A stretch of DNA of 64,000 nucleotides, taken from NCBI GenBank assembly GCA_964019335.1, contig OZ025719.1, positions 310,001 through 374,000 on the forward strand, given 5' to 3'. The translations under genes and the position numbers were made by a program. This DNA is from Diplonema japonicum. Lineage: Eukaryota; Protista; Euglenozoa: Diplonemea. This document shows, piece after piece, positions 4,312-63,130 of the stretch (position 1 is its first letter; each line of letters starts with the position of its first letter). Under the pieces are notes generated by a model, which ran no database searches, was not told where the DNA came from, and worked only from the letters and a program-made list of their open reading frames with translations.

Positions 4312-5182
4312 TTTCTTTTCTTTCCCATCCATTTTTTATTCCACACAAATGAAAGAAATATGAAGTATAAAAGAAAATAAAAAAAATAAAAAAAATAAAA
4401 AATAAAAAAAACACACATTAAAAAAAAAAAAATTAACATACGGAGATAGTGTTTCCTGCTTTAGTTTTGGTCCTGTTTTTTTTTTCTCCTTTTTCTTTTC
4501 TTTTTTTCGTAAAGCAGACCAAAACTAGTTTTCAGATAGCCTCGAAAACCCTCCACTTGTCTTGTAAGCCCCTTCCGTTCTTATCCCCGTTTTTTTTTTC
4601 TTCTTTTTTTTTATTTCCTGGTTCGGATAAAATATAGCTCTTTAGGGCCACCAACCTTTTCTCTTTTATGGTTTGCTTTCGCCAATATCTTTTTCTTCTC
4701 CCCTCCCCGCCCCAGTATGTATGCAGAAGAGAAGAAAGAAGAAAAGGCCGTATGTCTTCAACAAAGGAGGGGAGGGAAAGGGAAAAAAGCGAGAGCGCGG
4801 GGAGAAAATAAAATGGGGGACATAAAAAGTTAGTTATGTTTAAGGCGCACGGAAGGGGCTTGGCTGCCACAAACCGAGCTGTCCCAGTGCTTGAGGGGGC
4901 GGGGGGGCGGGGATGTTCCATTGTTTCATCCAGCGGCGGCTCCATTTTCCCCTGAACCACTTTCCCTCGTCCTTTTTTTTTTTTTTTTTTTAAGCACGCC
5001 CACACGAGAAGAAAAAAAGGGGGGGGGGACAAAAAGAAGAAAAAGTTTTTTTTTATATTTCCCCCCCCTCATACGCAAGCCCCGCCTCCAATTTTTCCTT
5101 CTTTATTATATCCCCCCCCCCCATTGTTGAGGGTGTTAAAAAAAGAAAAAAGATTAAAAAAGAAAAAGGGGGGAAAAAAGAA

Positions 5183-5959: not shown

Positions 5960-8900
5960 ATGACCCGCGACCCGCACAAAGGGGTGGGTGCAGAGGACAG
6001 GACCATTGATGAACTGGCGGCGTTCTACGGAGTGGACGACAACGAGAGCGAAGGAAACGAAGCGAAAGGGTTCAGCGCGATGGAGCTGAGGGAAGGGGAA
6101 AGAAAACGGCTGAAAAAGGAAACGAGCAAGATGAACAGAGAACAAAAGAAGGCGAAGGAGAAGGCAGACGCAGAAGAGAGGAAAAAGAGAGAACAGGCCA
6201 TCAAAAAGTCAGAATTGAAGGAGAAACAACAGAAGATCTCTTTCCCACTGCAGTCCATGACAGACTCAATGCCACACCCAGAGGACGAAGAGAGCGACGA
6301 GGAAGACATCGACAAGTACCTGATGAAGCAAACAAACACCACAACAGTTCTCACGGACATGGACCTCGACGAAGAAGAAGAAACACCTATGGGGGGAACC
6401 GCTTCGCTCTTCTTCGGAGATGACGATGATGAACCTCCGAAAAAAACAGCAGCGAAGCAAGAGGATTCCGACGAAGAAGGAGCCTACATGGAGGAGGCAC
6501 CGAAGCCCACAAGGAAGCAGCCCATCACCAACCCGCCTCTCCCCGAAGCTAAACGGAAGCGAACAGACCATCCCCAAACCAAGGTGAACTACACCGTGAA
6601 GACAGACCGAATGGTTGCTGCGTCCAGTGTTGACACCAAGACGGATGTTCGGTTCACCCAGTCACATGCTGCATCTACGCAACGTGTTGCCGACACCGAC
6701 TCCCTCAGCATGTACTGGTTCGATGCCCGTGAGGACGGCCATGGCCTCCTCGGCACCGGTGGAAGCACCGCTCCAGGCACCGTTTACCTCTTCGGCAAGG
6801 TGCGGAACGCTAACGGTGAGATGATCTCGTGTTGCCTGAGGATCGGCGGCCTGCAGCGCCAGGTCTTCTTCCTCCCACGGAAGACCCACCCCGACACCGA
6901 CGAGCCCATCCCCATTATCGACGCTCAACGTGAGATCATGAGATTCTGTTCCGCACAGCAGATCATGAAGCGCAGGGTCGACGTCCGTGACAGGTGGTAC
7001 GGCTTCGAAGACGAAGGCATCCCCCGCGACTGTGAAAAGTGGATCAAACTATCTTACTCCGCAGCCTACAAGGAACTCGGCATCACGCCGACCGCATCCT
7101 CAAATGTACAGAAGTACCTCTCCACGGTCACACACGCCTTCGGTGACGGGAGGAGCTTCCTTGAGATGTTCATGCTCAAGAAGCGTCTGAAAGGCCCTTC
7201 CTGGCTGAACGTGAACGGCTTCAAAAGGGTCGAGAAGTCCGAGCAGATGTCGCACTGCGCAGTGGAGTACGTCGTGGACACATACAAAAACATCAAGCTA
7301 GCAAAGGACTGGGAAAGTTTGCCAGCACCGCCTCTGAAGGCGTTGTCTGTGTCCTTGTTCACCGACTTGCGCAACAATGTGAATGAGATCATCTCAGCGT
7401 CGGCGGTGTTCTACAAGAAGCTTGATGTTGACAAGCCGTCTCCCAAGGAGGCCCCGTACAGGTGGGCGGGAATCAGGCCTCTGCCCGGTGCGAAGCTTCC
7501 CACGCCACACGTGGTAGAGGCTGCTTTCAAAAAGAACAACGTCCCCCCACCCACGCAGGAAGCCAACGAACACGCGCTGCTGACCCGCCTCATCAGCGAG
7601 ATCGTGAGAGAGGACCCTGACGTCATCGTGGGGCACAACTTCTTGTCCTTCGACCTCGACGTTCTTCTGCACAGGATGAATGACCTCAAAATCAACACAT
7701 GGGACAGGTTGGGTCGCCTCCGCCTGCGACATATGCCTAAATTACAGCACGGTGCAGGTGGTACCGGCGACAGTACTTGGGAGGAGCGCAGCGTCCTCGG
7801 AGGGAGGGTCATCGCTGACAGCTACCTGCTGGCCAAGGAGTACCACAAGACCAACAGCTACAAGCTGCGCAACCTTGCATTCGAGCTGAACCTAGGCGTC
7901 TCCGAAGAGAACGTTACTTTAAAACCTATCGGCGATCTGGAAGGTGCGTTGGGACAGCCTGACGGCATGCTGGAGATCGTGACGAGGACCGACCAGAAGG
8001 CTCTGCTCAGCTACTTCGTTGTGGACAAGCTGCAGGCCATCCCGTTGACGAAGCGTCTTACCTTCCTGGCGGGAAACCTGTGGACACGTACCCTGACAGG
8101 GTCCCGAGCAGAGCGAACAGAGTACCTCCTCTTGCATGACTTTTATCGCCAGAAATACGTCCTCCCTGACAAACGGCGCATCAGCTACGTGAAGCCAGAC
8201 GACGCTGAAGGGAAGCGCCGCGCAAAGTACATGGGCGGGATGGTGCTGGAACCCAAGAAGGGGCTATACAGCGACTACGTGCTGCTTCTTGACTTCAACT
8301 CCTTGTACCCGTCCATCATACAAGAGTATCAGATCTGCTTCACAACATGCGAAAGGCCGGAAGGTGATGACATCCCCAACGTTCCGGACAAGTCTGCTCT
8401 TCAATGCTCGAAGTGCGGGGAGGGCACCGAACCGTGCGTCCATAAGTGCGTCTTGCCGAAGGCAATTCGCGCGTTGGTGAACGACAGGAGACAGATAAAG
8501 AACTACATAAAGACAGAGAAGAACCCGGAGATGCGCGCGAAGTACGACATCATCCAGAAGGCGCTCAAGCTGACCGCAAACAGTATCTATGGATGTCTGG
8601 GGTTCCAACATTCGAGGTTCTATGCTAGACCGTTGGCGCAGCTTGTCACACAACAAGGCCGTGTTGCATTGTCGAGCACGGTGGATCTTGTAGAAACCCT
8701 GCCAGAGCATCAGCTCAGTGTTGTGTATGGTGACACGGATTCTGTGATGCTCAAGACAGACATTCCTAACACAATGCACGTTTCGCAGGCTGTCGCAAAA
8801 GCGCGGTATGTGAAGGAGGCTGTGAACCGAAGGTACTCGAACCTAGAGATCGACATCGATGGAGTGTTCAAATCGATCCTTTTGGTGAGGAAGAAGAAAT

Positions 8901-10194
8901 ATGCGTCAACCATCGTGAAGGACTGGCAAGGCGACGGGAACATCATCGAAAAGGAGATCAAAGGTCTCGACATGGTGAGGAGGGACTGGTGCCCTTACAC
9001 ATCGGAGGTTCAAGAGAAAACACTGGACTTCTGTCTCTCGGGCAACGACGAGGAAACCGTGCGGTCGAACATCATCGAATACCTCACAGAAGTCGGAGAG
9101 GTCGTGCGAAGCAACGACGCGGAGCTGGAAAAATTCCTGATCACGAAATCTTTAACAAAGGACCCCGCCTTGTACGCCAATTCCACAGCACAGCCACACG
9201 TTATCGTCGCTCTTAGAATGCAAGAGAATAAAATACCAGTCAAGGTCGGTGACTTCATCCAATACATCATTTGCACGGAGGTCAACGATTCCGGGGAGAA
9301 GAAACTGTCATCACGAGCGTTCACAAAAGACGAGGTTGTTTCAAAGAAGCTGACCATCGACAAGGAGTGGTATCTAGCCCAGCAGTTCCACCCGCCCATC
9401 TCAAGGCTGACTGAGAGCTTCGAAGGCCTCGACTCCCATGTTATTGCTCATTGTTTGGGTGTTGAAATGTCCTCACATATACACCACATTAAGACAACCG
9501 ACTCTGTTGACTACTCGATCACCGCTTCAGGCCGTCGTGCTGTCACTGAGCGGTACTACCCTCTGGAGCTTCGCGTGATGTGTCAGTCCTGCAAAACAAC
9601 AATCGTGTTCAACCCCCATGAGATTATCCTGAAGAAGCTGTCCGAGTGGAACGATGCCGAATGCCAGCCACGTGCGGGACTGCTTCGTTGCAGGTCGTGT
9701 AAGGCTATGTTGAACCTACGGTGCATTGGCAACCAGGTTGTGCGTGAGATTCGCGCGAGGCAAAAAGAATACTTCTCCGGTCTCGAGGGGTACGAATCAG
9801 ACTACTACAGAGACGCGGCGAGAAAATACAACGAACGGCATACAAGGGACTACGTGGATTTCGTAAGGGCTTTGTTCAGCTTGAACGAATGGTGCCAGGT
9901 GGTTATACATTATGTCAACACCGCACCCGAGGCACAGGTTATCGCGATTTGTGGTGAGTTAACAGATGCGCCGAGAGTGGCGGTGGAGAAGGTGTACGCA
10001 CTTTTGACGGATCCTGAGTTGGTATGAGAGGGGGGAGAAAGAAGAAAAGAGGAAGAAAAAAAAAAAAAAAACAGGAACAATTCATGCTCATTTCCCGGTA
10101 CCTTAAGTCCATCACTGAGAAGTTCGCCGCCACGCACGTTGACGTCGGGTCCATCTTCGATGTTGTTACGCATTTTTCAGGCAGGACTCGTTGA
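5960..10194 (+). CDS. POLA1: DNA polymerase alpha catalytic subunit (exons 5960-10021, 10075-10194)
   Basis: Family B motifs DPDVIVGHN, YMGGMVLEPKKG, LDFNSLYPSII, KLTANSIYG, YGDTDS, KKKY, KGLDMVRRDWC. A 53-nt intron (10022-10074) restores a C-terminal ...HVDVGSIF. Confidence 0.95.
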
Positions 10195-36262: not shown

Positions 36263-36410
36263 CAAACTGCACGAGCGCAGAATCTTGCTTACCCGGGACG
36301 CCCCGGCTGGGGTTGAGCACACCGCACGCATTAAGGACACGACGCGGAACGCAGAAGAAGCTACTGCTCGGCCGAGGAGCGCCCCCTGTAATCAAGTAGG
36401 TAGTTCGTGC
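36263..36410 (+). mobile_element. 5'-truncated copy of the short retroelement
   Basis: Closely matches 45313-45463 (AAACTGC.CGAGCGCAGAATCTTG.TTACCCGGGACG...GAACGCAGAAGAAGCTAC...TCAAGTAG). Confidence 0.8.
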
Positions 36411-36715
36411 TTCATTGCACGCTTAACGCCACCTAGTGTTGCAATCAAAGCCTCATTTTTTTTTTTTTTTTTTGCACTCCTTCAAGCCTTTTTTTTCTTC
36501 TCTATTCATCGCTTTGCGCAGGTTTTACTGTAAAATTCTCCTAGTTTTTTTGTCCATGAAGAACAGAATTCCGAAAAGATTGTTTACCCGACGTTTTGGT
36601 TTAGAGGGGGGGGGGGGGGGGGGGGGGGATAAAAGAACAAAGACAGAAACTTCTTCTGACGCGTCCTTCCGGAAAAGAAATTAGGAGATTTACAGTAAAT
36701 ATTTTTTATTTTTTA

Positions 36716-36825
36716 GGGGCTGGATATTGGGTTGGAATTAACAAAATCCCAATCAATCATGGCTGGGGAACCTCCAAGTGGTGGCCCTGGGTCTTCTCCC
36801 TCAGGAGGAGAGCAAAAACCCCAGC
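36716..36825 (+). ncRNA. HDV-like ribozyme at the retrotransposon 5' end
   Basis: P1 GGGGCT/GGCCCT (first pair G.U), P2 GCTGGGG/CCCCAGC, P3 ACC/GGT, L3 TCCAAGT, P1.1 CC/GG, P4 TCTTCTCC/GGAGGAGA, putative catalytic C at 36813. Confidence 0.75.
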
Positions 36826-37300
36826 AGGGGGCAGCACCTTCGTGGGTGCAGGTAGCGCGGGCGAGACCAGGGAAGGGGAAGGTGGTACGCGCGGTGAGGG
36901 TAACGGCAGAGGCGGGATGGCCGAAGACACATGGCAAGCAGCAGCAGGAACGCTGGATGGACGAGGACGAGGACGAGAACGCCACCGAGGTGCTGAGAGT
37001 GGTATGGAGGCGACCGGCGGCGGGGGAAGGGAGCAGGTCGAGGCCGACGCGAGAGAGCACACGAAGAAGGTGCTCGGAACCATGGGGATCGGGACCCGAG
37101 GGCTGTCAGACCCGAGGGGCGAGGGGTGGGACGGCAAGCTCACCAAGATGGACCTCCTGGTCTATCTGTCGGCGAGCGACGCGAAGAAAGCGAAGCAGGC
37201 CGGGGGTGCAGAAGGTACCGGTATGTACATCGAAGAACGAAGGAGGAGGAAGGAGGACGCGCCACCGTTGTGGCTAAAGACGTGGACGTGTCGGAGGGTA

Positions 37301-37477
37301 GGGGCACCCTTGTAGGATTCCATTTGTCGTGTGGAACTCCTCTCCAACGCCCGTGGCGTACCTGAAACGTCTCCGCATGCCCGCGTACATCCCCTTCAGC
37401 GCCCTTAGAATGCCCGTCTCCATGCCCATGTCCTCCACCAGCTCCATCACTAGTTGCTGCGGTACGCTGTCGAAGTA
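37301..37477 (-). pseudogene. Inverted reverse-transcriptase fragment
   Basis: YFDSVPQQLVMELVEDMG..GILRALKGMYAGMRRRFRYATGVGEEFHTTNGILQGCP matches the non-LTR RT 'FD.V' to 'G..QG.P' segment. Confidence 0.85.
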
Positions 37478-39048
37478 CGACAACGGGAGGCACATGCAGG
37501 CACGACACGAGCAGGCCTAGAACCGTGCATGAGGCTCCATGGCATCCTCCCGAGGGAAGCGGCCAAGGAGGACAAGGACAGGCTCGAGAAGACCCAGCGT
37601 TACCTGCTGGCTGTGGTGGGGGAACGCGACGCAACCTTGCAGGCAAAGAGGCAGCAGATCTACCGGACACACCAATGGCTGGAGATCACGGAGGGGGAGG
37701 CACACCCAGCACCAACAGAGGAGGAGTTCGCGAGGCTGCAGACCGGCAACACCCTGAAGGAGTACACGAAACCGGTGCTGAAGTGGCAAGCAGCTGCGCT
37801 GGTATGGAGGGAACAGAAGCACGGCAGTGTCGACGGTGGAGCTGGCGCTGGATTTCGAAAACGTGACCCAGAAGTCCCTTGGAGGGAAGCTAGGGGAGTT
37901 GGCAGAGGTGCGACAGAAGGCCAGAGAAAACGTGACCCAGAAGACTGCACACGGTGATGAAGAAGGTGTGGAACACATGGGAGCTAGGGAGACTGCAGAA
38001 GAAGGTGAGAGGAAGGAGGGCCTTCCCTGCTGAACCAAGGCGGTGATCGGGTGGAGTAGAAGAGCAATGTTTGCATCAACGAAGACCAAGTACGACCTGG
38101 AGGAGCTGGGGAAGCAATGGGCAAAGGAAAGAAGGGAAAAAGTAGCCAAGCTGGGGAGGAGGCCGGCACGACCACCGAAGAAGGAGAAACCGCTGCTGAA
38201 GGGGGATAGGTGCAGGTAGAGCATGAGAACAAGGGGGCGTCTCACAAAGACTTCCTTTAACTCATATATATTTTTTTATTTTCTTAAATGTCTCTTTTTA
38301 TTTTTTATTTTTTATGAACTATAAAGCATTGCACCCACGTGACATCGACTAACTGGTCTTTGTAAAAAGCGGCCCTTCCTTAATGTAGCGCTTGTTTTTT
38401 TATCCCTATCCAATTTTTCTTTTTTTGGAAAAGAGTAAAATGCAATATGGTAAGTGGAGTGTGTACACAAAAGAAATTCTTCTCCATTTTTTTTTTTTTT
38501 TTTTCGGGCTTCGCGTCCGGGGGAACAATTAGTGCGAACCCCCAACGCATGAATTAAAGATTTTCTTTTTTTTTTTTTTTTTTTTTTTTGATCGGAGTTC
38601 TTTATCTGTGAAAGTAAAGAACTTTGATATTCTTTTTCAACCCCACTACCTTGTAAGTAACAGAGGACCAACCATAAAAAAAAAAAAAGGAAAAAAAGAA
38701 TTTAAAAAAATAAAATAAAAAACCAAAATAAAAGAAGGAGAGAAGAAAAGAAAAAAAAAGGGGGGGGGGAAGTGAAGTCTTTTTATTTGGCGAGGGAATT
38801 GGTGCATAAAACGCAAAAGTTAACAATCCCTCCCATCATAGTGATTTTTTTTTTTTTTGCACCTTCTTCCCCCCCTTTTTTTTTCCTTTTCCCCTGCTTC
38901 TTACCCATTATAGCCACCTGACTTTCTTTTCCTATCCCCCTTTTTTTAACAAGAAATACACCTTGCAAAAAAAAAAAAAAAAAAAATAAATAAAAATAAA
39001 TAAATAAAAACACACAAAGAAAGGAAAAGAAAAAGGGGGGGAAAGAAA

Positions 39049-42047: not shown

Positions 42048-42950
42048 TAATTTAAAAAAATAGGGGCAGGGGGGCGGGGTGGGCTACAAAAGGGTTTGAA
42101 GAGGTTTTTTTTCCCCCCCCTTGCTTTTTACTTTTTACTTTCAAAAAAGTGTAAAACCTCCTCTTTTTTTTTTTTTTTTTTTTTGAGGCGCCGTGAAGGC
42201 ACCCCAGAGTGGGGACAGGACAAGTGTCTGGTCTTTTTTTTTTTTCCCCGCGGGTCTTCACAATTGTTGCCATTATGGGTCAGTTTTCTTTTTTTTTTTT
42301 CCCCTTCCTCTCTGTGTAGTTGAGTGATTGATGTGTGCTTGTAAAAACTCGAAGTGGGGGAAGAAGAAGAAAAAAAAAAAGAAATGATGAACTAAAGAAA
42401 AGGTCAGGACTTCGAAGTTATAGATCATAAGAACAAAAAAAGGGGGGGGTATGCAATTTTTCTAGCTACATACTTGCTGCATACCCCCTCGTTAATTTTT
42501 TTTTATATATCTGTGAGAAGGTTTTTTTTTTAATCTTTACAAAAAAGAAAAAAGAGTGCAACAAAAGAAAAGTATAGGGGAAAAAAAAAAAGGAGAAATC
42601 AATATTTGGGTGGTGGCATTGGGGTATGCTGCTCTCTGTGTCAAAACCACGCAACATGGTTTACTTTCTACTTTTCTTTTTTTTTTTTTTTTTTTTTTCA
42701 TTTGGCCCGTTGCTGCATTTCGCAAAAAGTCCCCCCCCCCCTTCTTCCCTTTGGAAGAAAAAAAGAGAGAAAAAAAAAAAGAAAAAGAAAAAAAGACCAC
42801 GCACTCTTTCCCCGCGTTTCACTGTCTTTGAATTTTGACTCTGATATGGTGGTTTCGTTAGATTTCCTTCCCCCCCCCCCTTTTTTTTCAAGCGGCGGGG
42901 ATAACACGGAGATATAAAGATGCATGTGGTGCGCCTCCTTTATCTCTTAT

Positions 42951-43004
<54 letters not shown>

Positions 43005-44400
43005 AAGTACGACTCTTTGACTTGTCTAAACAAAAGGGGAACGTTGGCAACGTGTTTCGGGTTGACAAACTTCTCCAGGTTTTACCCGGCACGTACAAAC
43101 AACGGCCAGTTCCTCTTTTCCCTTTTTTTTTTAATTTCCCGCAAATATATGACTACCAAAAAAAAAAAAAAAAGAAAAGAAACTGTCCACTGAATGGCTT
43201 TCACAGTTCTTGTGTCAAGAAAACAAAAGAAAAGGGGGGGGAGGGGGAAACGTTTGCAGCAGCTAGGCTTCTAACCCCAAACGGGGGGGATAAAGAAAAA
43301 TAAAAGGGGAGAAACCTGTTACCACCCCCCCTTTTTTTTACTTTTTGATGTGAAGCCTGACAGGGTGTGGTCCTAAAACCGCATCAAAACGAAAAAGAAA
43401 AGGAAGACAAACCCCCTTTCCTTACTCTCTCGATCCACAATTTTTTTTAAAAAAAAGGGGGGGGGGGGGGGGGGGGAGTACTCTCGAACGTCGTACCTTC
43501 TGTCTTTAAACGACGTGGCAGCACCTGCTTCTCCAGCCCTGTAGGACAGCCTACCAGGTGCTCCTATAAGAACGAGAAAAAAAAGAAGGAAAAAAAAAAA
43601 AAGAAGAAATAAAAAAAGAATTCCCCCCTTTCCGATTGCGTTGGTACGTTGGTTTAAACTTCTCCAGCATGTCCGGATCTACTATGCTTCAAGTATTTTT
43701 TTTTCTTTTTTTTTGTTACAAATATTTATCTTTCAGAAAATGATTTTATAACTATATGCAACTCGTGCCGAGCAAAAAACTTTCGCAGCTTTTTTAAAAA
43801 ACCTTTTTTTGCTCGTGCGAACAACAAAGACATATAGTCATAAAGAATTATTTTTCTTTTGGTCCGGGGGAAAAAAAAAGAAAAAAAAAGAAAAAAAAAA
43901 AAAAGGTGTATCAAGAGCCATTTTTTTGAGAGGGTTTAGGTCGAAATTAATTTTTTTTGCTGGAACAAGTAAACAAATTTTTGAAAAGAATTGTTATTGC
44001 AAAAAAGAGTAGAGGCAGCTTGTCCGTTTATCCCTACTGTAGGTGAAAACGGCTTTGCACAAACAATCAGCCGACTCTTTTTTTTTCCTATGAAGTCGGG
44101 AGGGGGCGGGGACGCTTTTTTTTTTTTTTTTTTTTTTTTGCATCACTTTTTTCCAGTTTTTTTTCCACCCACCCCCCTCCCCCATTGCCCACAACAAGAA
44201 TAAATTTGCCTATTCTTTTTTTAAATGTTATATTATGAGTGTATTGGAAGGGGGGGGACGAAAAAAAAAGAAAGTGGAGAAAAAAAAAAAGATGTAATCA
44301 AGGTGGTATCAACAATATCTAAATAGGTATTTCGATGACAATATTGTTGATATAACAAAGACTGCCTTTCACCCCATCTATTCTTTTTTTTTTTTCTTCT

Positions 44401-44431
<31 letters not shown>

Positions 44432-45144
44432 GGCAAGTATTATTATTATTATTTTTTTTCTTCTTTTTTTTGACGGTGAATTTATTTTCCCGAAGAAGAT
44501 TCTCCTCCCCCCCCCACTAACTGCATTTTGGACGATAGTACTATATGCTCCGATAATCACCTGGAGGAGGGGATGGCATGGAGTAATTTAAAAAAAACAG
44601 ATCTTTATATGTAGATGATCTTTTCAACGGGGCTCCACTAAGATGTCGATTTAGTACAACTTCAAGCCAGAACTGCCCTTTGCCCTCTTTTAACAAAGGC
44701 GGTGTCTCGCATAGACCTCCTTTAACCCATATATTTTGTTTTGTTTCGCTTTGTTTCGACTTTCTCTCTCCCACCACCACCCCCCTTTTTTTTATTGAAC
44801 ACTTCATCCAGAAAAAAGAAAAAAAAAGAAAACGGTGGGTGTAAGGCAAACCAGCGGAAATAAATGCTGAGTCTGCACTAAAGTTCCCTCCCCCCCCCTT
44901 TTTTTTATTGCGCATGGCCATTTGCTTATACTCTCCTCCCTCTCTTTTCGTAAGGGAAATACTAGTGTGTCTAAGAAGAACCCTCTATATGGTAAAGATA
45001 GTACATTTGTTAAAGGTAAAATTGGTTAGGGTAAAAAAAGAAAAGAAAGAAGGAAGGAAGAAAAAAAAAAAGAAAAGAAAAGAAGAACAAACAATTACAA
45101 ACACATGTACCCATTGTAAATATTGCGGCTATTGAAGGATGGGA

Positions 45145-45177
<33 letters not shown>

Positions 45178-45179
45178 GG

Positions 45180-45313
45180 GGTGGTGGGGATAACATGGAA
45201 ATATAAGAAAAACATCAGATGTGTTGTTCGCTGTTGACCTCCTCGTCGGTCATCACCGGTAGCGCCCGAGTGGAAGATCATAAAGCAGATGCTCAGGGTG
45301 ACGAACAGGCAGC
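45180..45313 (+). ncRNA. HDV-like ribozyme, copy A
   Basis: P1 GGTGGTG/CATCACC, J1/2 hairpin GGATAACA/TGTTGTTC, P2 GCTGTTG/CAG(G)CAGC, P3 ACC/GGT, L3 TCCTCGTC, P1.1 GG at 45258-59, P4 CGCCCGAGT/GCTC(A)GGGTG, J4/2 ACGAA with C at 45302. Confidence 0.85.
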
Positions 45314-45490
45314 AAACTGCGCGAGCGCAGAATCTTGGTTACCCGGGACGCTCCGGCTGGGGTTGAGCTGTACACCGCATGCATTAAGGACACGACGCGG
45401 AACGCAGAAGAAGCTACAACTCGGTCGCGGTGCGCCCCCTGTACTCAAGTAGACAGTTCTTGTGCAGGGCGCCGCCAACACCGGCTTTAA

Positions 45491-45493
<3 letters not shown>
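45180..45493 (+). mobile_element. Short non-autonomous retroelement (HDV ribozyme head plus LINE-like tail), apparently full length
   Basis: Similarity with copy B begins exactly at ribozyme P1; ends in TTTAACTCA(TA)n as the LINE does at 38256. Confidence 0.8.

Positions 45494-45570
<77 letters not shown>
45494..45570. repeat. (AT)n microsatellite at the retroelement tail
   Basis: Perfect AT run of about 77 nt directly after TTTAACTC. Confidence 0.95.
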
Positions 45571-45574
<4 letters not shown>

Positions 45575-45656
45575 ACCGTGTCACCTGAACCGTTAGCATG
45601 CTATTTCAGGAGGACCTCCAGGGTTGGTGCCCTCCTTTCTCTTTTATTATTTTTAT

Positions 45657-45690
<34 letters not shown>

Positions 45691-45768
45691 TTTCATGGAT
45701 ACAGTTTTTTTTTTTTTTTTTTTTTTTTGTCAGGCGTCCTGCCACATACCGCAGGTACCCTTAAATGT

Positions 45769-45800
<32 letters not shown>

Positions 45801-45805
45801 GATTA

Positions 45806-46022
45806 GGTGGTGGGGTACATCAGATGTGTTGTTCGCTGTTAACCTCCTCGTCGGTCATCACCGGTAGCGCCCGAGTGGAAGATCATAAAGCAGATGCTCA
45901 GGGTGACGAACAGGCAGCAAACTGCGTTACCCGGATCGCTCCGGCTGCGGTTGAGTTGCACACCGCACGCATTAAGGACACAACGCGGAACGCGGAAGAA
46001 GCTACAACTAGGCCGCAATGCA
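45806..46022 (+). mobile_element. Second ribozyme-headed short retroelement (ribozyme 45806-45918)
   Basis: Near-identical to copy A, with a shorter J1/2, one P2 mismatch and an internal deletion; putative catalytic C at 45907. Confidence 0.8.
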
Positions 46023-46205
46023 CCCCCCCTCCCCCCTTTCGGTTTGGAAGTTGGAACAACAAGGAAAGAAAAAGAAGAGAGAAAAGAAAACGGACAGTCT
46101 TTTTTTTTTTTTTTTTTTATTATGAGGTTCTTTTGACGGTGGTGTCGCAATGTAATTAAATAACTCTACAAGGGGAAGGGAAAAAAAAAAAACACAAAAC
46201 ACAAG

Positions 46206-62204: not shown

Positions 62205-62770
62205 AAGAACGGACAAGGACTTCGGCAAGCTACCGGCAGGGGATGTCCTACGGGAGTACACGAAGGAGGTGCTGAGGTGGATGCGGCAACTGCGCTGGTA
62301 TGCAGGCAGCAGGAACACGTCAGTGTCGACGGTGGAGCTGGCACTGGATTTCGAGAACGTGACCGGGAAGACCCTTGGAGGGAAGCTGGGGGATCTCGCA
62401 GAAGTGCAGCAGAAAGCGAGGAGATTGCATGGACTGATGAAGAAGATCTGGCACACATGGGAGCTAGGGAGGGTACTGAAGAAGGTGAAAGGAAGGAGGG
62501 CCTTCCCAGCTGAGCCGAGCACAAGGGTGCACACACAACGAACCATCGGGAGGACAAAGGCGGTGATCGGATGGAACAGGAGGGCGATATTTGCATCACC
62601 GAAGACCAAGCATGACCTAGAGGCGTTGAAAGGACAATGGGCGAGAGAACGAAGAGAAAGAGCGGCCAGGCTGGGGAGAAGGCCGGCAAGACCACCAAAG
62701 GAGGAGAAACCGCTGCTGAAAGGGGATAGGTGCAGGTAGAAGATGAGAACAAGGGGGCGTCTCACAAAGA
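62205..62770 (+). mobile_element. 5'-truncated non-LTR retrotransposon (GDRCR subfamily)
   Basis: LRWYAG..VSTVELALDFENVTG...LLKGDRCR*; nucleotide-similar to 37730-38250. Confidence 0.8.
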
Positions 62771-63130
62771 CGAACACAAAGAATTGTTGTAGCATTTGTT
62801 GGGGGGGGGGGGGGGGGGCTACAGGATTACCCCCTCTTCCCACAACAATCAAAAAACTTTTTTTTTTGTTCGACTTGTCACCTTGACATTAAAAGACGGA
62901 TTTTTTTTTTCCCCCTCTTGATTTTTTTTTTTGAATACAAATAACAAAAAACACTGTTATTTCGTAGTTTTCACAGGACGTTACAAAAAAAAAAAGAAGC
63001 TTTTCTTTTGTTTGTTTTAAGCAAGATAATCTCCATAACCTATTAGGGTTTTTTTTTCCGATACCCCCCCCCCATTATTTAGAAAAAACCCCCACCCCCC
63101 AACTACACAAAGGAAAGAGAGAGAGGAGAA

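What the first reader, a model, noticed from the sequence alone, without database searches (positions are those of the whole stretch)
45180..45493. Ribozyme-headed short retroelement: full HDV-like fold plus LINE-like tail
Seen: every HDV element is present in order. P1 45180-86/45251-57 (7 bp), J1/2 hairpin, P2 45230-36/45306-13, P3 ACC/GGT, L3 TCCTCGTC (HDV genomic UCCUCGCU), P1.1 GG, P4, and J4/2 A-C-GAA. Similarity to the second copy begins exactly at the predicted cleavage G. The 3' half loosely resembles the LINE C-terminus (GTLRLGLSCTP...QKKLQLGRGAPPVLK*) and ends in the same TTTAACTCA(TA)n. Known: R2 and trypanosomatid L1Tc/ingi elements use 5' HDV-like ribozymes. Inference: this is a non-autonomous element that cuts itself out of polycistronic pre-mRNA and borrows a LINE RT. 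I do not recognise the family.
Basis: partly seen in the sequence, partly recalled or inferred. Interest (0 to 1): 0.9.

Follow-up and report, generated by a model that had tools for sequence, protein, structure and literature searches.

The report
Ribozyme-headed SINE in a diplonemid
This is one copy of a short, very abundant jumping element in a marine protist (a diplonemid); its first 134 letters fold like the self-cutting hepatitis-delta-type ribozyme, a trick known from other jumping genes but apparently not yet reported in this group.

Summary
Window 45180-45494 plus a (TA)38 tail is one copy of a ~319-nt non-coding retroposon.

- **Copy number:** the genome has 486 exact copies of its ribozyme core.
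- **Boundaries:** about 45 aligned copies all start at G45180 and end in TCCTTTAACTCA(TA)n.
- **Fold:** nt 1-134 contain every HDV-like element, with the putative catalytic C at 45302.
- **Chance rate:** a full descriptor gives 0.14 chance hits per shuffled window. The real window has three hits, each on the first base of a repeat.
- **Partner LINE:** it encodes one 2036-2072-aa endonuclease plus reverse-transcriptase ORF. It ends in the same 12 nt plus (TA)n and begins with its own HDV-like ribozyme, which has different P1, P2 and P4 sequences.
- **Other families:** two further families (C and D) repeat the fold, and Rfam's HDV-F-prausnitzii model hits them below threshold.
- **Constraint and orientation:** core positions vary about 7 times less than the SINE body. 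All 28 scorable copies lie sense to neighbouring genes.

Not supported: any similarity of the 3' half to the LINE C-terminus. Not shown: actual cleavage, because only contigs were available for the RNA check.

The kind is known (R2, L1Tc/NARTc). It is new for diplonemids, and it has long J1/2 inserts and swappable tails. Unchecked notes from this scan describe similar elements elsewhere in this genome.

The parts
45180..45313 (+). HDV-like ribozyme head of the SINE. P1 45180-86/45251-57. J1/2 hairpin 45187-45229. P2 45230-35/45308-13. P3 45237-39/45248-50. L3 45240-47. P1.1 45241-42/45258-59. P4 45263-45300. Putative catalytic C at 45302. Predicted cleavage is immediately 5' of G45180.
   Evidence: All genomic copies begin at this G.
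45314..45481 (+). Non-coding SINE body. It is shared with the poly(T)-tailed subfamily. It has no tRNA, no Rfam match, and no similarity to the LINE.
45482..45571 (+). 3' terminal motif plus microsatellite tail. The family consensus is CCTCCTTTAACTCA, and this copy has lost 4 nt of it. The motif is followed by a (TA)38 tail at 45495-45571. The last 12 nt plus (TA)n are identical to the 3' end of the partner LINE.
45806..46027 (+). Second, older copy at about 86% identity. It has the same ribozyme but a shorter J1/2 (22 nt), an internal deletion in the body, and no recognisable tail.
36716..38271 (+). Internally deleted copy of the partner LINE (subfamily B). It contains LINE positions 1-600, an inverted piece, and the last ~850 nt ending TTCCTTTAACTCA(TA)n. 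Its first 110 nt (36716-36825) form an HDV-like ribozyme that overlaps the start codon.
36263..36473 (+). 5'-truncated copy of the sister SINE subfamily. It has the same body but an alternative tail, ...CAATCAAAGCC(C/T)CA(T)n. Full-length members carry the same ribozyme head.
62210..62771 (+). 5'-truncated 3' fragment of LINE subfamily A, 99% identical to a full-length copy.
44705..44731 (+). Short LINE-type 3' end (TCTCGCATAGACCTCCTTTAACCCATATAT), read as an extreme 5'-truncated insertion.

Best explanation
WHAT IT IS
Window 45180-45571 is one copy of a ~319-nt SINE-like, non-autonomous non-LTR retroposon of a diplonemid (Euglenozoa).

PROPOSED MECHANISM
1. Copies sit in T-rich intergenic tracts, in the sense orientation of the long same-strand gene arrays, so they are transcribed as part of read-through transcripts.
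2. The first 134 nt fold into an HDV-like double-pseudoknot ribozyme. It cleaves immediately 5' of G45180 (catalytic C45302) and gives the element RNA a precise 5' end.
3. The 3' terminal TCCTTTAACTCA(TA)n is recognised by the endonuclease/reverse-transcriptase protein of a LINE family with the same terminus.
4. That protein copies the RNA into T-rich targets by target-primed reverse transcription, often adding 1-5 extra A/C-rich nucleotides at the 5' junction.

WHAT IS SHOWN
- The family, its sharp ends, its copy numbers and its orientation.
- The complete fold and its conservation, with compensatory changes, across at least four element families.
- The LINE with the shared tail and with its own ribozyme head.

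WHAT IS INFERRED
- Catalytic activity.
- Release from polycistronic RNA.
- Mobilisation in trans by the LINE.
For: FAMILY AND ENDS
- The first look found 1439 candidates. The 40 that were scored are 95-97% identical.
- The genome has 486 exact ribozyme cores and 460 (TA)n-type 3' ends.
- Every aligned copy starts GGTGGTGGGG after an unrelated flank and ends ...TTTAACTCA(TA)n.

FOLD
- All helices and junctions are present.
- The full descriptor gives 0.14 chance sites per shuffled window, against 3 real sites, each on base 1 of a repeat.

COMPARATIVE SUPPORT
- LINE-A, LINE-B, family C and family D all begin with the same architecture and share the ACC-UCCNNGU-GGU core and the CC/GG P1.1.
- P1 differs: GGUGGUG, GGGGCU, GGGGUC, GGGGCC.
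- P2 differs: GCUGUU/GGCAGC, CUGGGGA/UCCCCAG, GGCUGCU/GGCAGCU, GGCUGCU/AGCGGCU.
- The P4 stems are unrelated but stable.
- Rfam RF02682 (an HDV-like ribozyme) is the best of 4227 families on families C and D, at E 0.004-0.009, on the predicted strand and position.
- Compact ribozymes in metagenomes share the core with further compensatory P2 changes.

CONSTRAINT
- Across 45 SINE copies, the P1, P3/L3/P1.1 and P4-stem sites carry 6 differences in 51 sites. The body carries 145 in 166 sites.
- Subfamily-diagnostic variants lie only in the J1/2 loop and the P4 loop.

PARTNER LINE
- It has a single 2036-2072-aa ORF with Exo_endo_phos and RVT_1 domains.
- There are 339 tails but only 26 heads, the usual pattern of 5' truncation.
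- It has the identical last 12 nt plus (TA)n.
- It shows the same T-rich targets and extra 5' nucleotides as the SINE.
- A transcriptome protein is 100% identical over residues 600-1600 of the LINE ORF.

ORIENTATION AND RNA LIBRARIES
- All 28 scorable copies are sense to the longest flanking ORF.
- Element sequence is present in marine RNA libraries.
Against: - No cleavage or RNA 5'-end data exist. Read laying served only assembled contigs, some of which run through the site from upstream poly(T).
- No Rfam HDV-type model hits the SINE itself, even at E<=10.
- The nested MFE of the 134 nt is no better than shuffles (z = 0.49).
- Within the SINE family the helices never vary, so covariation comes only from comparison between families.
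- The SINE has G1-C78 rather than the canonical G1-U wobble, and one unpaired G at the P2/P3 junction.
- The tail shared with the LINE is short, at 12-13 nt plus (TA)n.
- Target-site duplications cannot be separated from chance because the flanks are T-rich.
Confidence: 0.75

Rival explanations
1. The 5' fold is a conserved RNA (or DNA) element of these retroposons, but it is not a working ribozyme. It might be a binding site for the LINE protein, an internal promoter like the Pr77 DNA element of L1Tc, or a translation or stability element. In that case the sharp 5' end comes from transcription initiation.
For: - Conservation and covariation show selection on the structure, not on catalysis.
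- In L1Tc the same 77 nt act both as promoter and as ribozyme (PMC3383444, listed), so a promoter role is plausible.
- The LINE ribozyme region is also coding sequence, which by itself constrains it.
- No RNA-end data are available.
Against: - Every catalytic-core feature of HDV-like ribozymes is kept in four families, while the helices change sequence. These features are G1 at the terminus, a 3-bp P3, an L3 starting UCC, a 2-bp P1.1, and a C followed by NAA before P2.
- Rfam's ribozyme model recognises families C and D.
- A protein-binding or promoter element would not need this exact topology.
Confidence: 0.12
2. The ribozyme was functional in an ancestor, or is functional only in families C/D or in the LINE. 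In this SINE it is an inactive passenger, and the copies spread for other reasons.
For: - The SINE version deviates most from the canon. It has G1-C instead of G1-U, a long 42-nt P4 region, a junction bulge in P2, and no Rfam hit.
- The MFE is not exceptional.
Against: - The SINE is the most successful family, with 486 exact cores.
- Its core sites are about 7-fold less variable than its body among copies, and subfamily-defining changes avoid all helices. This argues for selection on source copies.
- Every full-length copy starts at G1.
Confidence: 0.08
3. The element really lies on the minus strand. The poly(T) run upstream would then be its poly(A) tail, and the apparent ribozyme start would simply be the 3' end of a conventional A-tailed SINE.
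For: Most copies are preceded by long T runs, which are A runs on the other strand.
Against: - Several copies have no T run at the junction (L009, L010, L019, L030), yet all have the (TA)n end.
- The partner LINE has the same two junction types, and its ORF reads on the plus strand.
- LINE 3' ends outnumber 5' ends, 339 to 26. This fixes the (TA)n end as the priming end.
- Informative flank repeats such as TCTATTT bracket [extra nt + element + (TA)n].
Confidence: 0.02

Closest known systems
L1Tc / NARTc of Trypanosoma cruzi, with the L1TcRz ribozyme in the Pr77 hallmark. Also RIME/ingi and SIDER (PMC3185411, PMC3383444, PMC4035085).
   Same: - It is a Euglenozoan LINE plus short non-autonomous partner.
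- Both begin with an HDV-like ribozyme that cuts at element position +1.
- It was proposed to release element RNA from polycistronic transcripts.
- The LINE has an APE-type endonuclease plus RT in one long ORF.
   Different: - L1TcRz is 77 nt, starts with C (CCCTG...), and has a 1-bp P1.1. Here the ribozymes are 110-134 nt, start with G, have a canonical 2-bp P1.1, and carry a 40-50-nt J1/2 hairpin.
- NARTc shares its first 77 nt with L1Tc at close to 100% identity. Here the SINE head and LINE head differ in P1, P2, P4 and J1/2.
- The tails here are (TA)n or poly(T). L1Tc/NARTc tails are poly(A), which I state from my own knowledge.
- The protein search found only diplonemid LINEs, so membership in the ingi clade is not shown.
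R2 retrotransposon 5' ribozyme and R2-derived non-autonomous SIDE elements (PMC3774820, PMC3414825).
   Same: - An HDV-like ribozyme at the 5' end cuts the element out of a host co-transcript at the exact 5' junction.
- Short non-autonomous derivatives keep the ribozyme and the 3' end needed by the RT.
- Non-templated nucleotides occur at 5' junctions.
   Different: - R2 is site-specific for 28S rDNA and uses a restriction-like endonuclease. These elements use an APE-type endonuclease and land in dispersed T-rich intergenic tracts.
- This SINE is not an internal-deletion derivative of its LINE.
HDV-F-prausnitzii (Rfam RF02682), an HDV-like ribozyme family.
   Same: Families C and D of this genome match the model from P3 to P2' in core sequence and structure: CACCUC..CGUGGU, GGCAACG, CGGCUAAGA.
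   Different: - The matches are sub-threshold, at 26-28 bits against a gathering score of 44.
- The true P1 5' strand lies 40-50 nt upstream, behind a J1/2 insert.
- The SINE itself is not hit.
Large HDV-like ribozymes with peripheral J1/2 domains (PMC4908430).
   Same: A structured insert lies between P1 and P2. In that paper, such domains bring P1 and P2 together and activate the ribozyme.
   Different: - Here the insert is present in all four families of one genome, with unrelated sequences.
- In the LINE it contains the 5' UTR and the start codon.
- Its role here is untested.
Stringent LINE/SINE pairs that share a 3' end with a short-repeat tail, such as eel UnaL2/UnaSINE1 (from my own knowledge, not checked here).
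   Same: The SINE and the LINE share the terminal motif and a microsatellite-like tail instead of poly(A).
   Different: - The shared part here is only 12-13 nt plus (TA)n.
- The same SINE head and body also exist with a second, poly(T) tail.

Membership tests
HDV-like self-cleaving ribozymes | Nested double pseudoknot with P1, P2, P3, P1.1 and P4 in the canonical order. | tested here: met
   Searches show all helices present, with P1 7 bp, P2 6 bp, P3 3 bp, P1.1 2 bp and P4 10 bp. The descriptor hits exactly at 45180.
HDV-like self-cleaving ribozymes | Cleavage site 5' of G1 at the base of P1. The canonical G1-U wobble is expected. | tested here: inconclusive
   G1 is the first base of every copy. 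The SINE pairs G1 with C78, a Watson-Crick pair. LINE-A, LINE-B, C and D have G1-U.
HDV-like self-cleaving ribozymes | Catalytic cytosine in J4/2, followed by N-A-A before the 3' strand of P2. | tested here: met
   The SINE has C45302-GAA. LINE-A and LINE-B have C-AAA. Family C has C-CAA or C-UAA. The single family D copy has C-UGA.
HDV-like self-cleaving ribozymes | Base pairing kept through compensatory changes among relatives. | tested here: met
   Between families in this genome, and in metagenomic relatives, P1, P2 and P4 change sequence but stay paired. Each of the 5 P2 positions shows 4-5 standard pair types in 10 ribozymes. Within the SINE family the helices are invariant, which is uninformative. 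The count was made with my own structural parse, because MAFFT alignments were not in register for the count of structure pairs.
HDV-like self-cleaving ribozymes | A match to curated covariance models (Rfam). | tested here: not met
   The SINE gets no HDV-type hit, at gathering score or at E<=10. Families C and D get RF02682 at E 0.004-0.009, which is 26-28 bits against a gathering score of 44.
HDV-like self-cleaving ribozymes | Mg2+-dependent self-cleavage giving a 5'-OH product. | not testable with these tools
   The only RNA data served were assembled contigs, which cannot show RNA ends.
SINE / non-autonomous non-LTR retroposon | A short, non-coding, dispersed, high-copy element with defined ends. 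| tested here: met
   The element is 319 nt with no ORF beyond chance. There are 486 exact cores and 460 (TA)n tails.
SINE / non-autonomous non-LTR retroposon | The 3' end is shared with an autonomous LINE in the same genome. | tested here: met
   The last 12-13 nt plus (TA)n are identical to the LINE-A and LINE-B end. There is no further similarity.
SINE / non-autonomous non-LTR retroposon | Target-site duplications. | tested here: inconclusive
   The few informative copies show flank repeats of about 5-7 nt (TCTATTT, TTTTAT, TTTTATT, TTATTT). Because the flanks are T-rich, randomly paired flanks give similar lengths.
SINE / non-autonomous non-LTR retroposon | A head derived from a Pol III gene (tRNA, 7SL or 5S) with an internal promoter. 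This defines a classical SINE. | tested here: not met
   There is no tRNA and no Rfam family. The head is a ribozyme, so the element is SINE-like in the NARTc/RIME/SIDE sense, not a classical Pol III SINE.
Trypanosomatid Pr77-hallmark elements (L1Tc/ingi clade) | The 77-79-nt Pr77 signature at the 5' end. | tested here: not met
   L1Tc and NARTc start CCCTG... and their ribozyme is 77 nt with a 1-bp P1.1. These elements start GGTGG or GGGGC and are 110-134 nt. I made no alignment to a full Pr77 sequence.
Trypanosomatid Pr77-hallmark elements (L1Tc/ingi clade) | The partner LINE belongs to the ingi/L1Tc clade. | tested here: inconclusive
   The 48 protein hits were other proteins of this organism, Diplonema papillatum LINEs (30-48% identity), unnamed sequences and a few weak matches. 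No trypanosomatid element appeared, but the search is word-limited. No RT phylogeny was made.

The most novel reading that the evidence does not exclude
The sense-only, intergenic, ribozyme-headed SINEs and LINEs are not just parasites. They may form part of how this diplonemid punctuates its long same-strand transcripts. Each insertion would bring a self-cleaving site plus a fresh T-rich or (TA)n tract next to a gene, so that retroelement spread creates or moves RNA-processing signals. The same head and body has swapped tails to exploit two different LINE machineries.
Probability: 0.12. Interest if true: 0.8.

Novelty: new member of a known kind. Interest (0 to 1): 0.55.

Why it matters
HDV-like ribozymes at the 5' ends of non-LTR retroelements are known from animals (R2, RTE and others) and from trypanosomatids (L1Tc/NARTc). 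Diplonemids are the sister group of kinetoplastids and among the most abundant marine eukaryotes.

The D. papillatum genome paper says that a rigorous identification of its transposable elements is still to be done. No paper in the searched library links diplonemids with HDV-like ribozymes.

This genome offers several things of value:
- At least four element families have canonical, easily testable ribozymes.
- It provides a natural series of compensatory variants.
- Long J1/2 inserts bear on how peripheral domains tune HDV-like ribozymes.
- In one LINE the ribozyme overlaps the start codon.
- One SINE carries the same head and body on two alternative tails.

This makes two questions testable. 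One is whether ribozyme heading is ancestral in Euglenozoan LINEs or acquired repeatedly. The other is how retroelements cope with polycistronic transcription. It extends a known principle and is not a new principle.

Tried and rejected
- **Rfam on the window and the region:** no HDV-type hit for the SINE.
- **Thermodynamics:** the nested MFE z-score is 0.49, which is uninformative for a pseudoknot.
- **A LINE with the same ribozyme as the SINE:** the pattern for the ribozyme's 3' end followed by a non-SINE sequence gave one deleted SINE only. The partner does not share the head sequence.
- **Three abundant LINE families (ORFs of 1429, 1444 and 1435 aa; L043-L045):** no similarity to the SINE.
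- **The 12 best RT loci:** none match the SINE.
- **Tail pattern excluding SINE context:** this led to old duplicated SINE variants and to the real LINE tail.
- **Similarity of the SINE 3' half to the LINE C-terminus:** rejected.
- **Minus-strand A-tailed SINE:** rejected.
- **A headless 195-nt family at 36263:** rejected. The window copy is 5'-truncated, and full copies carry the same ribozyme.
- **tRNA-derived head:** none found.
- **RNA 5' ends:** only Logan contigs were available, so there is no end information.
- **Tool-based pair counting and a covariance model:** MAFFT could not put P2' and P4 of the families in register. I used my own structural parse instead.
- **TSD statistics:** confounded by T-rich flanks.
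Full report
**Organism and setting.**
The window has long ORFs almost only on the plus strand, separated by homopolymer-rich spacers. A DNA polymerase alpha encoded at 5960-10027 was searched with residues 600-1200. It is 100% identical to a EukProt transcriptome protein. Its next relatives include a Sulcionema-labelled entry (55%) and a Hemistasia-labelled entry (49%), then euglenids and trypanosomatids at 45-50%. The LINE proteins found later have Diplonema papillatum LINEs as their nearest named relatives. Element sequence also occurs in marine metatranscriptomes. So the genome (62.5 Mb, 132 contigs) is a diplonemid.

**The observation.**
- P1 is GGUGGUG / CAUCACC, 7 bp.
- J1/2 is 43 nt and closes into a 9-10-bp hairpin.
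- P2 is GCUGUU / GGCAGC.
- P3 is ACC / GGU.
- L3 is UCCUCGUC.
- P1.1 pairs the CC of L3 with the GG that follows P1.
- P4 is a 10-bp stem with one bulge.
- J4/2 is C45302-GAA.

My descriptor requires a 6-7-bp P1 starting with G, a P2 of at least 5 bp, a 3-bp P3, CC in L3, GG for P1.1, a P4 stem of at least 5 bp, and C-N-A-A. It finds 0.14 sites per dinucleotide-shuffled window on both strands. In the real window it finds three sites, at 36716, 45180 and 45806. Each is the first base of a repeat whose boundary was defined independently from multi-copy alignments. A chance hit on one given base has a probability of about 1e-6.

Two results count against or are neutral. No Rfam HDV-type model hits the SINE. 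The pseudoknot-free MFE is unremarkable (z = 0.49).

**The repeat family.**
- A whole-genome search gave 1439 first-look candidates. The 40 that were scored are 95-97% identical.
- Exact-pattern counts give 486 ribozyme cores and 460 3' ends of the (TA)n type.
- In about 45 copies the similarity starts at GGTGGTGGGG, after flanks that are unrelated apart from being T-rich. It ends in CCTCCTTTAACTCA followed by (TA)1-38.
- Between the T-rich flank and G1 there are usually 1-5 extra, mostly A/C, nucleotides.
- A few informative copies show short flank repeats, for example TCTATTT. Statistically, though, TSDs cannot be separated from the T-richness of the flanks.
- The window copy has lost 4 nt of the terminal motif and has an expanded (TA)38 tail.
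- There is no tRNA-like part and no ORF of note.

**Partner LINE.**
A tail pattern led to 339 copies of ...TCTCACAAAGACTTCCTTTAACTCA(TA)n. These lie about 1.8 kb downstream of one class of RT hits.

Two full-length representatives are L070 (subfamily A) and L071 (subfamily B), which are about 77% identical. Each has a single ORF of 2036 or 2072 aa with Exo_endo_phos and RVT_1 domains. A transcriptome protein is 100% identical over ORF residues 600-1600.

Only 26 exact heads exist against 339 tails. That is the usual 5'-truncation signature, and it fixes the (TA)n end as the priming end. The LINE 5' junctions look exactly like those of the SINE: a T-rich flank, a few extra A/C nucleotides, then G1.

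The window itself holds an internally deleted LINE-B at 36716-38271 and a LINE-A 3' fragment at 62210-62771. The SINE and the LINE share only the last 12-13 nt plus (TA)n.

**Comparative test of the fold.**
The LINE begins with its own HDV-like ribozyme:
- P1 is GGGGCU / GGCCCU, with the canonical G1-U.
- J1/2 is 40-46 nt. It contains the 5' UTR and ends at the AUG.
- P2 is CUGGGGA / UCCCCAG.
- P3 is ACC / GGU.
- L3 is UCCACGU or UCCAAGU.
- P1.1 is CC / GG.
- P4 is UCCCCUCCC / GGGGGGGGA in subfamily A and UCUUCUCC / GGAGGAGA in subfamily B, with C-G to U-A changes between them.
- J4/2 is C-AAA.

A core-motif search found two more families:
- Family C has P1 GGGGUC, a (CA)n/(UG)n J1/2 hairpin, P2 GGCUGCU / GGCAGCU, and P4 CGUGCAC / GUGCACG.
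- Family D has P1 GGGGCC, P2 GGCUGCU / AGCGGCU, and P4 CGCGUG / UGCGCG.

Each again starts on the first base after a variable flank. On families C and D, Rfam's HDV-F-prausnitzii model is the top hit of 4227 families (E 0.004-0.009, 26-28 bits, below the gathering score of 44). It aligns P3, L3, P1', P4, the catalytic C and the start of P2' where I placed them.

A metagenome scan with the core motif alone returned 13 loci. Six of them (five distinct sequences) are compact HDV-like ribozymes, with a P1 5' strand at the right place and perfectly complementary but different P2 helices. Across ten ribozymes, each of five P2 positions shows 4-5 different standard pair types.

The SINE's J1/2 loop (ACAUGAAAAUAUAAG) and its P2 resemble family C rather than the LINE. 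So the SINE is a mosaic, not a deletion derivative of its LINE.

**Constraint within the SINE.**
Among 45 copies, the P1, P3/L3/P1.1 and P4-stem sites carry 6 differences in 51 sites. The body carries 145 in 166 sites. Variants shared by three or more copies occur only in the J1/2 loop (positions 19, 31, 32, 34) and the P4 loop (99, 101, 105) within the ribozyme. This fits selection on source copies to keep the core.

**Orientation.**
In all 28 loci where a flanking ORF of at least 150 aa could be scored, the SINE is on the same strand as the longest ORF. Along contigs, hits switch strand in long blocks. So copies are co-transcribed with genes whenever transcription reads through. The T-rich target probably sets this orientation.

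**A sister subfamily.**
The fragment at 36263-36473 belongs to a subfamily with the same ribozyme head and the same body up to about position 283. It has a different tail...CAATCAAAGCCCCA(T)n, with 359 such tails in the genome. The window copy is simply 5'-truncated. This suggests tail swapping between LINE partners. I did not find the poly(T)-tailed LINE.

**Mechanism, and what is shown.**
Shown:
- The family, its ends, its copy numbers and its orientation.
- The fold, its conservation and its covariation.
- The LINE with the shared terminus.

Inferred:
- Self-cleavage 5' of G45180 with C45302 as the general acid. This is by analogy with HDV C75, which I state from established knowledge.
- Release from read-through transcripts.
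- Trans-mobilisation by the LINE protein.

The RNA check could not be made. All runs served were assembled contigs. They show the element in RNA libraries, but they show no ends, and some contigs run through the site.

**Comparison with what is known.**
The principle is that of R2 and of L1Tc/NARTc. The differences are:
- These are canonical and larger ribozymes, starting with G and carrying a 2-bp P1.1 and a J1/2 hairpin, against the 77-nt L1TcRz.
- The head is not shared between the SINE and the LINE.
- The tails are (TA)n or poly(T).
- The targets are T-tracts.

No paper in the library holds both 'HDV-like' and 'Diplonema'. The papers that mention both diplonemids and ribozymes are by title on other topics; the one I opened uses the word for self-splicing introns. 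The D. papillatum genome paper leaves transposable elements largely uncharacterised. I file this as a new member of a known kind.

Other first-stage notes of this scan describe ribozyme-headed SINEs and LINEs elsewhere in this genome. They are unchecked and are not independent evidence.

**Limits.**
- The majority-rule reference of SINE copies was used only inside scripts, for coordinates and variant counts.

Noticed in passing
window 36716-36825; L070:1471-1584; L071:1482-1591: The LINE's HDV-like ribozyme overlaps its ORF. The AUG sits at the J1/2-P2 boundary, and P2, P3, L3, P1', P4 and P2' encode the first ~22 residues (MAGEPP[RS]GGPGS...). The stretch is therefore constrained both as RNA structure and as coding sequence.
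   Followed up: partly
L045:6070-6191 (= L111:71-192); L084-L090; L086:90-208: Two further ribozyme-headed families, C and D, with a (CA)n/(TG)n J1/2 hairpin. Family C has no long plus-strand ORF in the ~2 kb that follow its head, and possible poly(T) ends follow at L111:1093 and L111:2032. Its nature (long SINE, or 5' part of a LINE) is unresolved.
   Followed up: partly
window 36263-36473; L095-L097; L052, L058, L061, L063, L065: A sister SINE subfamily with the same ribozyme head and body but a different 3' module, ending ...CAATCAAAGCCCCA(T)n. The genome has 359 such tails. This implies tail exchange and a second, poly(T)-tailed LINE partner that I did not find.
   Followed up: partly
L071:1340-1400; L079; L095: The sequence ...ACCAACGATTCTAAAGCTACAGTTTCTGTACTTTATT occurs at several loci. 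It is empty in L071, followed directly by a LINE-A start in L079, and followed by a SINE start in L095. It looks like a recurrent insertion site inside another repeat.
   Followed up: no
L066 (G000:C18:719200-726600, minus strand): Old, CpG-decayed SINE relatives whose body carries 4-6 tandem copies of a ~48-nt unit (ATTAAGGACACGACGCGGAACGCAGAAGAAGCTACAAC...). They still end in CCTCCTTTAACTCA(TA)n.
   Followed up: no
L099, L102 (two copies 1213 nt apart), L105/L110, L108 (metagenome contigs): Compact HDV-like ribozymes from unknown organisms. They share the ACCUCCNNGUGGUGGCCCUGGG core and have a short (2-3 nt) J1/2 with no insert. Two of them sit right after (GT)n microsatellites.
   Followed up: partly
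window 45495-45571 and intergenic regions 42500-46200: The window copy's tail has grown to (TA)38. The surrounding spacers are packed with T, A and G runs of up to ~40 nt and with fragments of element tails. Much of the intergenic DNA here may be retroelement debris.
   Followed up: no
L010 and L011 (G000:C104:296697-297021 plus strand, and 4838-5162 minus strand): The same SINE insertion with identical flanks occurs twice, in inverted orientation, near the two ends of one contig. This is either a segmental inverted duplication or an assembly artefact.
   Followed up: no
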